From Octopus bimaculoides (taxonomy: Eukaryota): DNA of 64,000 nucleotides. The DNA lies in assembly GCF_001194135.2 (NCBI RefSeq), contig NC_068983.1, forward strand, positions 17,367,415 through 17,431,414. Direction: 5' to 3'. This document shows, piece after piece, positions 19,035 through 28,251 of the stretch (within the stretch, counting starts at the first letter, position 1; every line of letters starts with the position of its first letter). Position numbers and translations under genes: made by a program. The notes below the pieces were generated by a model. The model saw nothing but the letters and a program-made list of their open reading frames with translations, was not told the DNA's origin and made no database searches.

Positions 19035-19396
19035 TATAGGAAAGTGGGTTATACATCATTAGATGTATACCTGACTTTCCTATATAAAATTAGAAATTAA
19101 CGGAACGCTGAACTCCAGACTATCAACATAACAACATTTATTTAAGGTGGTTAATATATACATCTTTAGCTCTTGTTTGTTGTTACAGCTTCTGTGTGTG
19201 TGAGCATTGTTGTTGGGACGTTGGTATGTAGATGTAAGCGAGCTGTCGAGCATAAGTTCGAAAGATGAAGAGAGACAGCTAAACACGTCCATGCTCAATC
19301 GCTGGCCATCAAGAAAGAGAGAGATCAAAGCGGGAAAGCTTGGTATGTTGAATTCCACGCATGCGTGAGACTACGCATGCGCACGGCGTTACTACA
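19035..19396 (-). mobile_element. Solo-LTR-like unit, family L1, copy 1
   Basis: Termini TATAGG..CTACA; TSD GATC at 19031-19034 and 19397-19400; AATAAA on the minus strand. Confidence 0.8.
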
Positions 19397-19400
19397 GATC

Positions 19401-19665
19401 AATCACAACAGCTGCTCAGCAGAGTAGAAACATCAGCTGCTAAAATAGGACTACACACAAATGTCAAGAAAACCGAGGACATATCTTTCAACCAATCAAA
19501 TGATGCTGAACTGTTTGCTTTGAACGGTTCCAAATTGAATGGTGTTGAAAACTTCAAGTACTTAGGTGGTTGGGTGGGCAGTTCGGAAGCAGACATAAAG
19601 ATTAAGAGGGCACAAGCATGGACAGCCCATCACAAAGTAAAGAATGTCTGGAACTCCAGATGGAA
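19401..19665 (+). pseudogene. RTE-type LINE RT fragment (inverted 5' segment)
   Basis: QQLLSRVETSAAKIGLHTNVKKTE..VENFKYLGGWVGSSEADIKIKRAQAW..VWNS. Confidence 0.85.
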
Positions 19666-19894
19666 TTTAAAATATTCCAAATTTCCCAGTCTTCTTTCTT
19701 GATATGTAATTACTCTGTAAATAGAATTCACTAGAAATTTCAATTGTGTTTATCTCATCTGAAATAAAACATCTATATACATACATTTCGTTAATATGAA
19801 CATGCAAATGGGCTTCACGGTGACACAACTTGAATTATAACCCCTGGTATATACTACGTACATATATACATACATACATATATATATGTGTGCC

Positions 19895-19947
<53 letters not shown>

Positions 19948-20228
19948 CACAATGTTAGTAACAGTGATAAAGAAAAAGACAGGGAGAGAAACTGCAGACT
20001 GACTTTTATTGTACACTAGTATGATGTACCAAAGATAACTTGACCAAGTTTGATGCTGTGAACCCGACTAATTATCTGTAACAATATTCCGGAAGGGTTT
20101 CAAATCTAAAAGAAATGAAAGTCTGTATTATTTATAATAAAACAGATATTCGAATGGATAAAATAAGCAGTTAATGCAATTAAGTTTGACCTTTTGTTCA
20201 ATTCTCTGCTCCTGGATGTTGAAACAGT

Positions 20229-20282
20229 AATTGTTTGATAGTATGGGAACCACTAAATTGTTTGATAGTATGGGAACCACTA
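20229..20282. repeat. Perfect 27-bp tandem duplication
   Basis: aattgtttgatagtatgggaaccacta x2. Confidence 0.95.
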
Positions 20283-20590
20283 AATTAGAAGGCATTGGAT
20301 TTTGGTGCCAGCAGAAACGTTCAAGTATCATTTGTTTATTTTTTACATACGAGATTTTAGCACTTTCATTCATATTGTCACACTAACAGCAACCTGTAAC
20401 CTTTCACGAGTCTGGAATATTTGAATTTATGCCAACTTTAACATTTACGTGGTTAATTATTTAACTGAATTACTGTCCTTCAAAATATTGGAGTTGGGAC
20501 AGCATCAAATAATAAGTACTTCAAGAGCCAAGAAATCCAGTACACTAAAATGGTTTACTCGAAAAAAAGTAACGTCACCGTATATAAACG

Positions 20591-21012
20591 TGTAGGAAAG
20601 TGGTTATACACCATTAGGTGTACACCGCTTCCGTACATTAAATTTCTAGAAGAAACAACGGAACGCAGATTCTGAACAACATAACAATATTCATTTACAG
20701 TGGAATTCAGTTCACGCTTGGAGGGAATTCGGTAGCTCGTCGTCCTCAGTTACTGAGACGCCTTCTGAATGATTTCCGTGGTTATTTGTGAAGCTCTGGT
20801 GCTGACATGTGAGAGAGCTCTGTTGGACGTCTTGGCTCGACGGAGATCAGGCAGCGAAGAGACTGAGAAAAGGCGCCAAAGCTGGGTGTCGAACTCTACG
20901 CATGCGCATGAGACTCTTCCTGTATTCCTTCCGGAACTAGTCCCTGCGCATGCGTGGATAAAACTCCGGACATTGAACATATAACAGTCGTCTGCTATAA
21001 GTTGTCACTACA
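20591..21012 (-). mobile_element. Solo-LTR-like unit, family L1, copy 2
   Basis: Termini TGTAGG..CTACA; TSD AACG at 20587-20590 and 21013-21016. Confidence 0.8.
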
Positions 21013-25500: not shown

Positions 25501-26086
25501 TGATTACAATTTGTAAGATTTTCAGAACAGCAAGCGTATCAGATGCCCCAATATCTGAGTTGACCTGTGTTAACCTAAGATCTGGTACAGAGGGTTGAGG
25601 TGATCAAGGACGATGATTTCCGAGAGAAAAGAGTTGAAATGGATGTCCTTAATACAGGATGTGAAATAATTTAACAATGACGAAAATTGTGTTGTTTGTG
25701 TTATGGAAGAAGCATATATATAAAAAAAAAAACAGGTATTACTGATGAATTATTGGAAGGATTAATCACTTTAGAATTTCTTGGACAATATCACGATATA
25801 ATTTATCACTTCCTGCCAAATTTGATGCTATCTAGAATTTTTGAATTTCCACATCTCTATGTCAACTCCAGATATTTATGAATATAACCAACTTTTAGCA
25901 GCATTTTTTTCTTAGTTGATGTTGAGATATGTCACTGCATTGAATTTAGTAACCCTTTGCCTGTCCCATGCATCACACGTGATACACAAGGACTATTTCT
26001 TTGGCGTTCATGCATCATAGATAATACACATTCCCAATTTTTTTTCATGTTCTAGTGTAATTTGAGACTTATGAAAGTCAAAGCTT

Positions 26087-26427
26087 TATAGGAAATGTGG
26101 TTATACACCATTAGGTGTACACCCGCTTTCCTATATTAAATTCTAAATAAACAACGTAACGCAGAACTCCGAACTATCAACACAACAATATTTATTTATG
26201 GAGGAAATAGGCAGCTTTAATCTTGGTTGCTGAGACGCCTTCTGTGAGAGAGCATGGTTGCTGAGACGTTGGAATGTTGATGTGAGCTCTCCCCAGAGTT
26301 GGAATGATGGAGAGACAGCTTGACCCGTCCATGCTCATGGCCGCCCGGCCGGGAAAAGAGAAAGAATCAGGGCGCCAAACTTGGATATTGATGACTACGC
26401 ATGCGCACGAGACAAGGCGTTACTACA
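26087..26427 (-). mobile_element. Solo-LTR-like unit, family L1, copy 3
   Basis: Termini TATAGG..CTACA; TSD GCTT at 26083-26086 and 26428-26431. Confidence 0.8.
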
Positions 26428-26966
26428 GCTTTATATTACACAGGGCTACCTAAAAATCTGAAAACGGACGTTTCGGATAGATTTTAGAAAATATTTCGGA
26501 CAGGCAAAAGATTAAGAATGTACAGTATTAGACTGAGAAACAAAGAGAATACGTGTACAGTTTGTCAAACTTCACCCATTTGATTCACCACTGCATATTA
26601 TTGTATACATTTTTGGCAGTGGCACGACATACCTGCAACAATAGGTTTGTGTGTCGCACCTAATTCTTCTTTGACTGATTTTAGTTGGGGTGCTACACAT
26701 AACAACTAACCTAGCACTGCATAATCTGTTGACATAACCAAGATGCTGAGAAGTGGGATAGAACTGGAAACCACGGGATCGCCATGCCAAAATATTATCG
26801 CACGGCTATACCTGCGCCCATTTGTAAAGGTAACTCTTGTCAGGTGTTTTTGAACTTTCCAATTGAATCTTGGTTCCTACAACTTTGCTTAATCTTCTAC
26901 AGTGTTTCTCAACCCACGCAACTCTCTAACCAGACAAAACCTTTGCTAACCCGATACTACATAACA

Positions 26967-27419
26967 TAGTGAAAGAAACGGTATGGAAGACGCGCTCGGA
27001 AGGAATTGCGACAGGACAATTCATCTCCAGACGAGGGCTGGTGAACTACTTCACCGCCCATCTAGTTTCCAAGATCCGTCTGGAGAGGAGGAGCTTGTCG
27101 CAAAGAGTATTTGCCAAAAGATGGAAGGATGTCGCAAGAAAGTTGTGTATGCAAGGGGCCATGCCAACACGGTCGGACCGGGCATAGAAGGAAAAGAAAA
27201 AGGAAAAAAAAATCAACCGGCGGGTTAGTGGGACACTCCCCAACCCAAAAGTAATCCAATTTTTAAAACAATAACATCATCACATTATAATATATTATTC
27301 TCATGTCAAAATCATTCGTTAAATCATCTGTAAAAAGGCTCAACGATCTATATGTTCCCCCTTGTCTGTCCTAGTTCGTCCCCTCTATGTATCCTATTTA
27401 TTAGGAAATAAAAGAAAAT
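26967..27419 (+). mobile_element. 5'-truncated Tx1/L1-type LINE (ORF2 C-terminus plus 3' UTR)
   Basis: 20-bp TSD taacccgatactacataaca at 26947-26966 and 27420-27439; KETVWKTR..LVNYF..KIRLERRSLSQRVFAKRW resembles a Tx1 ORF2 end; A-rich tail. Confidence 0.7.
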
Positions 27420-27621
27420 TAACCCGATACTACATAACAACTAACCTGACGAGGCATAATAACTTAACTTAACACCATATAACAAATCATTTTGCGTTCA
27501 TAACAACTCACCTCGTGCTCCGTAACAACAAATCAGACTTTACATAACAACAAACATGACTATATATAAGTAAAGTCGAAGTATAACGACCTTCTTTTGC
27601 CGTTGTATTGTTCAATAAGCT

Positions 27622-27763
27622 TTTAGGAGAGCTTGGTCGCTGTCAGGCTTGGTAAAGAGACAGTCTAATAGCGGGAACGCTTCGATGTTGAAACCCACGC
27701 ATGCGTGGTTAAGGATTCAGTAATGGCGCCTCAGCCTTTTGGCGCCAATATGACGTCACTACA
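27622..27763 (-). mobile_element. Internally deleted L1-family unit, copy 4
   Basis: Termini TTTAGGAGAG..CACTACA; TSD AGCT at 27618-27621 and 27764-27767; contains acgcatgcg. Confidence 0.55.
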
Positions 27764-27923
27764 AGCTAAAACCAAGACTTTACAATGTCACCAAAGCTTT
27801 CACTGCTGCTAATGTTGAGGCTTTCTTTCAACAGTGAGTGAACAGTATTGCTTTTCTCCCATAACATAGTTATTAGTTATAACAACTGGAGACATCATCT
27901 CTTTAGTATAGGTCTTAATCATT

Positions 27924-28251
27924 TTTAGTAGAAAGTGGGTTATACATCTTTAGATTGTATACCTGACTTTCTACTATAAAATTAAAGAAATAGACGGAAC
28001 GCTGAACTCCAGACTAAACAACTCAAACAACATTTATTTAGGAGATAAACATACAAATCTTTTAGTTATACATCTTTAGAGGTGAGAATAACGAGCTGTC
28101 GAGTATAAGACCGAAAGATGTAGGGACAGCTTTTAAACACACGTCCATGCTCAATCGCTGGCCAGCGAGAAAGAGAATGAATTGAGCGGGAAACGTTTGC
28201 TTGTTTAATTCTACGCATGCGTAAGACAACGCATGCGCAGGCGTTACTACA
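27924..28251 (-). mobile_element. Solo-LTR-like unit, family L1, copy 5
   Basis: Termini TTTAG..CTACA; TSD CATT at 27920-27923 and 28252-28255; clear similarity to copy 1. Confidence 0.78.

What the first reader, a model, noticed from the sequence alone, without database searches (positions are those of the whole stretch)
19035..28251. Five co-oriented TGTAG..CTACA units with 4-bp TSDs and a covarying terminal stem-loop
Seen: units at 19035, 20591, 26087, 27622 and 27924 (142-422 bp), each with a different 4-bp TSD (GATC, AACG, GCTT, AGCT, CATT) and all in one orientation within 9.2 kb. Four carry a roughly 19-bp-arm hairpin abutting one end. Copies 1 and 5 have atacatc/gatgtat-like arms, copies 2 and 3 have atacacc/ggtgtac, which is a compensatory pair change. 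Known: TG..CA ends with 4-bp TSDs indicate integrase-type insertion (Ty3/Gypsy solo LTRs; also Ginger). Inference: solo LTRs or a TRIM-like mini-element with a functional U5 structure and local targeting.
Basis: partly seen in the sequence, partly recalled or inferred. Interest (0 to 1): 0.7.

Follow-up and report, generated by a model that had tools for sequence, protein, structure and literature searches.

The report
Clustered solo LTRs in octopus DNA
Five leftover end-pieces (solo LTRs) of a retrovirus-like jumping gene lie close together and point the same way in an octopus genome; they share a conserved hairpin at one tip, which is a nice detail of an otherwise ordinary kind of repeat.

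Summary
Five diverged copies (72-82% identical) of one repeat family lie at 19035-28251. All are on the same strand, each has its own perfect 4-bp target-site duplication, and there are no other copies in the 64-kb window. The window is octopus DNA, closest to O. bimaculoides.

The anatomy fits solo LTRs of a Ty3/Gypsy-type retrotransposon whose sense strand is the window's minus strand:
- a TGTAG start;
- CGCATGCG palindromes near the 5' end, in the presumed U3;
- a conserved AATAAA followed by a GT-rich stretch;
- a 47-53-nt stem-loop forming the last part of U5, including the terminal base.

The stem-loop is well supported for so few copies: z-scores of -5 to -8, 97.5% of cells paired, and 5 of 20 pairs with compensatory changes. 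Its three one-sided changes give G-U pairs on the minus strand only.

TRIM, Ginger, retrozyme and SINE readings each fail a defining test.

Clustering within the window is non-random (P about 0.002-0.003), but its cause could not be tested. No octopus DNA, and so no full-length element, was reachable with these tools.

Verdict: a new member of a known kind, of modest interest.

The parts
19035..19396 (-). c1, solo LTR (362 bp); TSD GATC at 19031-19034 and 19397-19400
20591..21012 (-). c2, solo LTR (422 bp, extra sequence in the presumed U3 and R); TSD AACG at 20587-20590 and 21013-21016; the only copy with canonical TG at the hairpin end
26087..26427 (-). c3, solo LTR (341 bp); TSD GCTT at 26083-26086 and 26428-26431
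27622..27763 (-). c4, internally deleted LTR (142 bp). It keeps 9-10 bp of the hairpin end plus the CGCATGCG end and has no hairpin. TSD AGCT at 27618-27621 and 27764-27767
27924..28251 (-). c5, solo LTR (328 bp); TSD CATT at 27920-27923 and 28252-28255
19035..19084 (-). Terminal stem-loop of c1 (about 21 paired bases per arm, one bulge on each side, loop UAAU on the minus strand); inferred to be the 3' end of U5
   Evidence: z -7.0 minus strand, -7.9 plus strand
20591..20637 (-). Terminal stem-loop of c2
   Evidence: z -5.7
26087..26135 (-). Terminal stem-loop of c3
   Evidence: z -6.5
27924..27976 (-). Terminal stem-loop of c5. The outer stem is TAGTAGAAAG/CTTTCTACTA where c1 has TATAGGAAAG/CTTTCCTATA
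   Evidence: z -5.5
19137..19142 (-). AATAAA on the minus strand of c1, followed by TGTTGTTATGTTG. The same alignment column holds AATAAA in c3 (26191-26196) and c5 (28033-28038), and AATGAA in c2
19357..19381 (.). Two ACGCATGCG palindromic motifs in c1 (presumed U3, 12-45 nt from the minus-strand 5' end). The motif also occurs at 20898-20906, 20947-20955, 26397-26405, 27697-27705, 28213-28221 and 28229-28237, and nowhere else in the window

Best explanation
**What the units are.** The five units are solo LTRs. Each is what remains after LTR-LTR recombination removed the body of a Ty3/Gypsy-type LTR retrotransposon of an octopus. They come from several diverged subfamilies, and each arose from an independent integrase-mediated insertion with a 4-bp staggered cut.

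**Layout.** The element's sense strand is the window's minus strand. Read that way, each LTR has:
- a start of TGTAGTAACGCC;
- one or two CGCATGCG palindromes in U3, which look like NRF1/Ewg-type sites and suggest a TATA-less promoter;
- AATAAA plus a GT-rich downstream element about 110 nt before the end;
- a 47-53-nt stem-loop ending U5, whose outer stem includes the terminal integrase-recognition bases.

**Role of the stem-loop.** In a full-length element's RNA this stem-loop would sit immediately 5' of the primer-binding site. I infer that it acts like the U5-IR stem-loop of retroviruses and of Tf1, helping to start reverse transcription.

**Shown versus inferred.**
- Shown: family membership, TSDs, termini, the conserved poly(A) motif, and the stem-loop with compensatory changes.
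- Inferred: the U3/R/U5 assignment, the promoter role of the palindromes, the function of the stem-loop, and the existence of full-length parents.

**Clustering.** The clustering and shared orientation are real within the window but unexplained. My preferred cause is a regional insertion or retention bias, for example antisense retention inside a plus-strand transcription unit.
For: **Family and insertions.**
- The TSDs are perfect, and the right-hand end is CTACA in all five units, which reads TGTAG on the minus strand.
- Profile and alignment show one family with conserved blocks.
- All 20 TSD base pairs are intact. By my arithmetic this bounds post-insertion change at roughly 7.5% or less per site, so most of the 18-28% difference between copies predates insertion.

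**LTR layout.**
- AATAAA sits at one alignment column on the minus strand in c1, c3 and c5, 107-114 nt from the end, and is followed by a GT-rich stretch. On the plus strand the only ATTAAA/AATAAA motifs lie about 50 nt from the start, where they cannot serve an LTR.
- This matches the conserved layout of animal Metaviridae LTRs: TGTNR-type short inverted repeats, AATAAA, a GT-rich stretch, and often no conserved TATA box (PMC3601003).
- In O. bimaculoides all 275 LTR elements found by LTRharvest were Gypsy (PMC6238403).

**Stem-loop.**
- It folds with z of -5 to -8.
- Of 20 pairs, 5 have changes on both sides. 97.5% of cells are paired, against 34-52% when the partners are slid. 0 of 500 shuffles reach the covariation score.
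- Three A-U to G-U changes on the minus strand would be A-C mismatches on the plus strand.

**Exclusions.** No hammerhead or other Rfam family was found.
Against: - No full-length element, PBS, PPT or gag-pol was seen, because no octopus DNA outside the window could be reached.
- The canonical CA at the hairpin end is present in only 1 of 5 copies (TA in two, AA in two).
- Only four hairpin sequences exist, and they are related by descent, so the covariation statistics are weak.
- The strand assignment rests on sequence motifs and three G-U cells, not on transcripts.
- A plain solo-LTR model does not predict five copies within 9.2 kb.
Confidence: 0.65

Rival explanations
1. The unit is itself the whole mobile element. 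On this view it is a short non-autonomous element moved by a Gypsy-type integrase or a Ginger-type transposase as DNA, not a remnant of a larger retrotransposon. The terminal palindrome would serve as a transposase-binding or hairpin-forming end.
For: - Only single units with their own TSDs are seen, and there is no internal retrotransposon sequence anywhere in the 64 kb.
- TGTNR termini and 4-bp TSDs are shared by Ginger elements (PMC2836005).
- The 142-bp c4 still has both ends and a TSD.
Against: - The terminal inverted repeat is only 5 bp, against 40-270 bp for Ginger. The TSDs are not CCGG/CCGT or RTATAY (PMC2836005).
- The two ends are strongly asymmetric.
- The internal AATAAA plus GT-rich layout is that of an LTR (PMC3601003).
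- Solo LTRs commonly outnumber full-length copies, so seeing only single units in 64 kb is expected.
Confidence: 0.1
2. These are solo LTRs, but the palindrome is not an RNA structure of U5. The sense strand would be the plus strand. The palindrome would then be a DNA-level feature at the start of U3, such as a dimeric protein site next to the TATATAAAA box, or simply an inherited inverted duplication of the integrase-recognition end.
For: - A TATA-like run (TATATAA/TATAAAA) follows the hairpin on the plus strand in c1 and c5.
- A palindrome folds equally well on either strand.
- With four related sequences, covariation can arise by descent (caveat printed).
Against: - The TATA run is absent from c2 and c3, and part of it is simply the outer stem.
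- No plus-strand poly(A) signal lies in a usable position.
- All three one-sided changes give G-U pairs on the minus strand and A-C mismatches on the plus strand.
- The bulges are conserved between subfamilies, which argues against a templated perfect palindrome.
Confidence: 0.15
3. On the clustering: the five copies mark active, orientation-specific local targeting by the integrase, through a tethering factor or a chromatin feature at 19-28 kb. On this view the cluster is not due to chance or retention.
For: - Five insertions from at least three or four subfamilies lie within 9.2 kb, with none in the other roughly 50 kb. The within-window P is 0.002-0.003.
- The family fills 17% of the stretch, whereas all LTR elements together are under 1% of the O. 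bimaculoides genome (PMC6238403).
Against: - No common sequence or feature flanks the insertion sites. The flanks are unrelated, and the window has no tRNA gene.
- One strand in five of five has P of only 0.06, and the finding was picked out post hoc.
- The other coding transposon remnants I could orient are also on the minus strand: a mariner, the main LINE reverse-transcriptase piece and a CCHC ORF. That pattern points to a strand-wide retention bias rather than to this family's integrase.
Confidence: 0.15

Closest known systems
Solo LTRs of animal Ty3/Gypsy (Metaviridae) retrotransposons, for example the Mag-type LTR layout described by Benachenhou et al. 2013 (PMC3601003)
   Same: - TGTNR-type terminus.
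- Short, non-specific TSD.
- Size of 330-420 bp.
- Conserved AATAAA followed by a GT-rich stretch, with no conserved TATA box.
- Single copies, each flanked by its own TSD.
   Different: - The last 47-53 nt form a palindrome that includes the terminal bases.
- The penultimate base at that end is C in only one of five copies.
- The parent element was not seen, so the superfamily (Gypsy, BEL or Copia) is inferred from the TSD length and from the octopus literature.
U5-IR stem-loop of retroviruses and of the self-priming Ty3/Gypsy element Tf1. PMC3601003 discusses the U5-IR loop and hairpin priming; the details of the Tf1 and avian-retrovirus work are from my own knowledge.
   Same: A conserved stem-loop made of inverted repeats inside U5. 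By position it lies directly upstream of where the primer-binding site would be. Pairing is kept through compensatory changes.
   Different: - Here the stem reaches the very last base of U5, so the integrase-recognition end is duplicated in inverted form about 45 nt inside the LTR.
- Function is untested.
- No PBS is available to show the spatial relation.
Ginger1 and Ginger2 DNA transposons (PMC2836005)
   Same: TGTNR termini and 4-bp TSDs. These come from a Gypsy-like integrase.
   Different: - Ginger elements have 40-270-bp terminal inverted repeats and specific targets (CCGG/CCGT, or RTATAY).
- These units have a 5-bp inverted repeat, asymmetric ends and varied targets.
TRIM and retrozyme-type small non-autonomous LTR elements
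   Same: Short LTR-like units with 4-bp TSDs.
   Different: - No two units share a TSD or flank a short PBS/PPT-bearing core.
- There is no hammerhead ribozyme.

Membership tests
LTR of a Ty3/Gypsy-type retrotransposon (present as a solo LTR) | TGTNR start at the U3 end | tested here: met
   All five units read TGTAG at the minus-strand 5' end, which is CTACA at the plus-strand right end. The TGTNR pattern is from PMC2836005 and PMC3601003.
LTR of a Ty3/Gypsy-type retrotransposon (present as a solo LTR) | CA at the other (U5) terminus, complementary to the TG | tested here: inconclusive
   The terminus is CA in c2 only, TA in c1 and c3, and AA in c4 and c5. In c1-c3 that base pairs with the inner arm of the hairpin (A-T, G-C, A-T). 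The intact TSDs argue that this is not post-insertion decay.
LTR of a Ty3/Gypsy-type retrotransposon (present as a solo LTR) | Short (4-6 bp) TSD of variable sequence directly flanking the unit | tested here: met
   GATC, AACG, GCTT, AGCT and CATT are each perfect. In 4 of 5 units an A precedes the left copy, so a 5-bp TSD with ends TGTAG..CTAC cannot be excluded.
LTR of a Ty3/Gypsy-type retrotransposon (present as a solo LTR) | Internal poly(A) signal AATAAA followed by a GT-rich stretch, dividing U3/R from U5 | tested here: met
   Found on the minus strand in c1, c3 and c5 at one alignment column (AATGAA in c2), followed by TGTTGTT(A/T)TG.... The expected layout is from PMC3601003.
LTR of a Ty3/Gypsy-type retrotransposon (present as a solo LTR) | Elsewhere in the genome, two copies flank a body with PBS, PPT and gag-pol; RT and integrase place it in Ty3/Gypsy | not testable with these tools
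   The window has no such body. No octopus DNA was reachable: searches gave nothing or only chance hits, and translated LTR ORFs hit nothing.
TRIM-like miniature LTR retrotransposon | Two short LTRs sharing one TSD and flanking a short core with PBS and PPT | tested here: not met
   Each unit has its own TSD, and the outer flanks of neighbouring units do not match. The gaps of 1194, 5074, 1194 and 160 bp are unrelated sequence containing SINE and LINE pieces.
Ginger1/Ginger2 DNA transposon or a MITE derived from one | Terminal inverted repeats of about 40-270 bp | tested here: not met
   The two ends match for 5 bp only. The 47-53-bp palindrome is confined to one end.
Ginger1/Ginger2 DNA transposon or a MITE derived from one | Target specificity: CCGG/CCGT for Ginger1, RTATAY for Ginger2 | tested here: not met
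   None of the five TSDs fits either target (PMC2836005).
Retrozyme | Hammerhead ribozyme inside the LTR-like repeat | tested here: not met
   Rfam found nothing at gathering score in the window. At E up to 1 in 18900-28400 it found only three far-sub-threshold, unrelated hits.
LINE-mobilised SINE | A-rich or simple-repeat 3' tail, variable-length TSD, pol III head | tested here: not met
   There is no tail at either end, and the TSD is a fixed 4 bp. No tRNA-like head was found.
U5-IR-type stem-loop (works-like comparison) | A conserved stem-loop inside U5 directly upstream of the PBS and needed to start reverse transcription | tested here: inconclusive
   Structure and covariation are met. 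The position at the end of U5 is inferred from the poly(A) signal. The PBS and the function are not available.

The most novel reading that the evidence does not exclude
This would be an octopus LTR family with three unusual properties.
- Its U5 ends in an obligatory palindrome that duplicates the integrase-recognition end.
- It tolerates a non-canonical TA or AA terminus.
- Its subfamilies insert repeatedly, in one orientation, into particular short genomic stretches.

The last property would mean either true orientation-specific regional targeting or capture in a unistrand, piRNA-cluster-like trap.
Probability: 0.1. Interest if true: 0.6.

Novelty: new member of a known kind. Interest (0 to 1): 0.3.

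Why it matters
As it stands, this is routine repeat annotation for a cephalopod genome. LTR elements are a small fraction of that genome (under 1%, PMC6238403).

Two details could repay a genome-wide look.
- **The U5 stem-loop.** It is conserved, covaries and reaches the terminal base. This would be a clean natural case for studying how U5 structure and integrase-end recognition coexist in an invertebrate Ty3/Gypsy element.
- **The cluster.** A tight, co-oriented cluster drawn from several subfamilies would point to regional targeting or a transposon trap in octopus, if it recurs elsewhere. Transposon control in octopus does not rely on DNA methylation (PMC9476566).

Tried and rejected
**Attempts to reach more copies or a full-length element all failed.**
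- Exact-protein look-ups of a window ORF and of an O. bimaculoides homologue found no contig.
- Pattern scans for the hairpin and for the 3' block in metagenome, viral and prokaryote-genome collections gave nothing or chance hits in GC-rich phage-like contigs.
- A protein search with translated minus-strand ORFs of c1-c3 gave no hit. These ORFs are only 30-33% identical to each other, so they are not coding.

**Hypotheses tested and dropped.**
- c2 plus c3 as the two LTRs of one old 5.8-kb element: rejected. Their outer flanks differ (AACG against GCTT), each has its own TSD, and the interior is SINEs.
- c5 plus c4 as a TRIM: rejected for the same reason.
- Pol III or tRNA targeting: rejected. 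The window has no tRNA gene, and only c2 lies near a tRNA-derived SINE head.
- Segmental duplication: rejected, because the flanks are unrelated.

**Searches that added little.**
- Pfam found nothing significant in nearby ORFs.
- PDB confirmed only the mariner fragment.
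Full report
**What is there**

Reading 18900-21200 and 25900-28400 and cutting out the five claimed units confirms them:

| Unit | Coordinates | Length | TSD |
|---|---|---|---|
| c1 | 19035-19396 | 362 bp | GATC |
| c2 | 20591-21012 | 422 bp | AACG |
| c3 | 26087-26427 | 341 bp | GCTT |
| c4 | 27622-27763 | 142 bp | AGCT |
| c5 | 27924-28251 | 328 bp | CATT |

- Each TSD is a perfect 4-bp direct repeat directly abutting the unit.
- The units are homologous but diverged: blastn gives 72-82% identity, and MAFFT gives mean column identity of 55% across all five.
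- A profile built from them and run with nhmmer --max finds exactly these five, all on the plus strand, and nothing else in the 64 kb.
- The motif ACGCATGCG occurs in the window only inside these units.
- c4 keeps 9-10 bp of the left end and the right third of the unit. That is why it has no hairpin.

**Source and surroundings**

- The window is a draft animal assembly with 13 runs of N.
- An ORF at 32054-32746 on the minus strand matches O. bimaculoides CCHC-type proteins at 86-89% identity. The DNA is therefore from an octopus, probably O. bimaculoides or a close relative.
- The neighbourhood is repeat-rich, with several SINE families in both orientations.
- It holds a mariner transposase fragment at 16941-17168 on the minus strand and pieces of an RTE-like LINE.
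- There is no tRNA gene and no Rfam family.
- No retrotransposon body (gag, RT, integrase) is visible among ORFs of 70 aa or more.

**Anatomy and strand**

The conserved blocks, read on the plus strand, are:
- the left end T(G/A/T)TAGGAAAG, which opens a palindrome;
- an A/T-rich run;
- AACGGAACGC;
- ATTTATTTA;
- CGTCCATGCTCA;
- one or two ACGCATGCG motifs;
- the right end GGCGTTACTACA.

On the minus strand ATTTATTTA reads AATAAA. It sits at one alignment column in c1, c3 and c5 (AATGAA in c2), 107-114 nt from the end. A GT-rich run, TGTTGTTATGTTG, follows it.

On the plus strand the only ATTAAA/AATAAA motifs lie about 50 nt from the start, where they could not serve an LTR.

The minus-strand order is:
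1. the TGTAG start;
2. the CG-rich palindromes;
3. a long middle section;
4. AATAAA;
5. the GT-rich stretch;
6. the last ~100 nt, which close on the stem-loop.

This is the conserved layout reported for animal Metaviridae LTRs, some clades of which lack a conserved TATA box (PMC3601003). I therefore read the units as LTRs whose sense strand is the minus strand, with the palindromes in U3 and the hairpin at the 3' end of U5. That the CGCATGCG palindromes resemble NRF1/Ewg sites is from my own knowledge and was not tested.

**The stem-loop**

- The first 47-53 nt of each long unit fold into a hairpin with a 4-nt loop. The arms are 20-23 nt and are interrupted by the same small bulges in all four copies.
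- The free energy is -20 to -27 kcal/mol, with z-scores of -5.1 to -7.9 against dinucleotide shuffles.
- The outer stem starts at the very first base of the unit.
- RNAalifold on the minus strand predicts 20 pairs for this hairpin, 5 of them with changes on both sides. Three cells change from A-U to G-U.
- On the plus strand those three cells are A-C mismatches or are left unpaired, and there are no G-U pairs.
- Counting on the fixed structure gives 97.5% of cells paired, against 34-52% when the partners are slid. Five pairs and six cells have double changes. 0 of 500 shuffles reach the covariation score.
- With four related sequences this is suggestive rather than proof. It is nonetheless consistent, and the G-U asymmetry favours an RNA fold on the same strand that the poly(A) signal favours.

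**Termini and TSD details**

- The right end (plus strand) is CTACA in all five. The second base of the left end is G only in c2.
- In c1, c2 and c3 that base pairs with the inner arm of the hairpin (A-T, G-C, A-T).
- All 20 TSD positions are intact on both sides. By my arithmetic (exp(-40d) = 0.05) this bounds post-insertion change at about 7.5% per site.
- Four independent hits on that one base after insertion are therefore unlikely. The family probably carries a non-canonical TA or AA at this end.
- In four of five units an A precedes the left TSD copy. A 5-bp TSD with ends TGTAG..CTAC would fit c1-c4 but not c5. I keep 4 bp plus ...CA as the simpler reading.
- The bases flanking the targets are A/T-rich.

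**What it is not**

- **TRIM.** No two units share a TSD, and the gaps between them are unrelated DNA.
- **Ginger.** The inverted repeat between the two ends is 5 bp, against 40-270 bp for Ginger. The targets are not CCGG/CCGT or RTATAY (PMC2836005).
- **Retrozyme.** There is no hammerhead.
- **SINE.** There is no tail, and the TSD is a fixed 4 bp.
- **Coding sequence.** The minus-strand ORFs that run through c1-c3 are 30-33% identical and gapped. They hit nothing in the protein collection.

**Clustering and orientation**

- Given five copies in the window, the chance that all fall within a 9.2-kb span is 0.002-0.003. The chance of one shared strand is 0.06.
- The family fills 1,595 of 9,217 bp (17%), whereas all LTR elements together are under 1% of the O. 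bimaculoides genome (PMC6238403).
- The clustering is therefore probably real, but the finding was selected post hoc and I could not obtain a genome-wide background.
- The flanks share no sequence.
- The other coding transposon remnants I could orient are also minus-strand:
  - the mariner;
  - the 3' part of the LINE;
  - the CCHC ORF.
- That pattern suggests a strand-wide retention bias, such as antisense retention within a plus-strand transcription unit or a unistrand transposon trap. It does not point to a property of this family's integrase. This remains untested.

**Limits**

- Every route to more octopus DNA failed.
- The parent element, PBS and PPT, copy number, genome-wide orientation and a large covariation test are all missing.

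**Verdict**

These are solo LTRs of a Ty3/Gypsy-type family (confidence about 0.65) with a conserved U5-terminal stem-loop analogous to the U5-IR stem-loop. They form a locally dense, co-oriented cluster of unknown cause. This is a new member of a known kind, of modest interest.

Noticed in passing
window 18868-19030 (minus strand) and 19401-19700 (plus strand), flanking c1: c1 sits within 4 bp of the junction between two inverted halves of one RTE-like LINE reverse transcriptase. Joined in LINE order, the halves align over 99% of their length to RVT_1+PF20049 proteins, with a small overlap at the junction. This looks like a twin-priming-type inverted LINE insertion that the LTR later hit exactly at the inversion point.
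   Followed up: partly
window 19397-20590 and 26428-27621: The gap between c1 and c2 and the gap between c3 and c4 are both exactly 1194 bp, yet the two sequences are unrelated. I treat this as coincidence, but it is unexplained.
   Followed up: partly
window 19036, 20592, 26088, 27623, 27925: The second base of the hairpin end is A, G, A, T and T in c1 to c5, while the other end is invariant. In c1-c3 this base covaries with its pairing partner. The family may use a non-canonical terminal dinucleotide at U5.
   Followed up: partly
the five units versus the rest of the window: CpG observed/expected is 1.03 inside the units and 0.57 in the rest of the window. This agrees with the report that octopus transposons are CpG-dense and essentially unmethylated (PMC9476566).
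   Followed up: partly
window 16941-17168 (minus strand): A mariner transposase C-terminal fragment (E 3e-10 to SETMAR, 5e-8 to Mos1). It lies between two N gaps.
   Followed up: partly
window 31664-32767 (minus strand): Two adjacent ORFs. One, at 32054-32746, is 86-89% identical to O. bimaculoides CCHC-type proteins. The other, by eye, carries a CCHC-knuckle-like motif. They are probably the ORF1 or gag of another retroelement. Pfam found nothing.
   Followed up: partly
window 30485-30766 and 49667-49850: A repeat 95-98% identical at two places 19 kb apart. It includes a 98-bp unit duplicated in tandem at 30557-30753, and the first copy starts right after an N gap. It is either a young repeat or an assembly duplication.
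   Followed up: no
window 22311-23703: A composite repeat structure. Terminal segments are inverted (22311-22371 against 23634-23703). A 106-bp unit is duplicated (22368-22473 and 22488-22593), with an inverted partial copy at 22815-22885. It is possibly a foldback or MITE-like element.
   Followed up: no
window 24673-25228: Two tandem copies of a roughly 299-bp SINE-like unit, 77% matching. Relatives of the unit are scattered through the window in both orientations.
   Followed up: no
window 44677-45339 (minus strand): Two ORFs that look, from my own knowledge, like the region just upstream of a LINE reverse-transcriptase domain (the motif WKAPRPDGVQGYW). Pfam and PDB searches did not confirm this.
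   Followed up: partly
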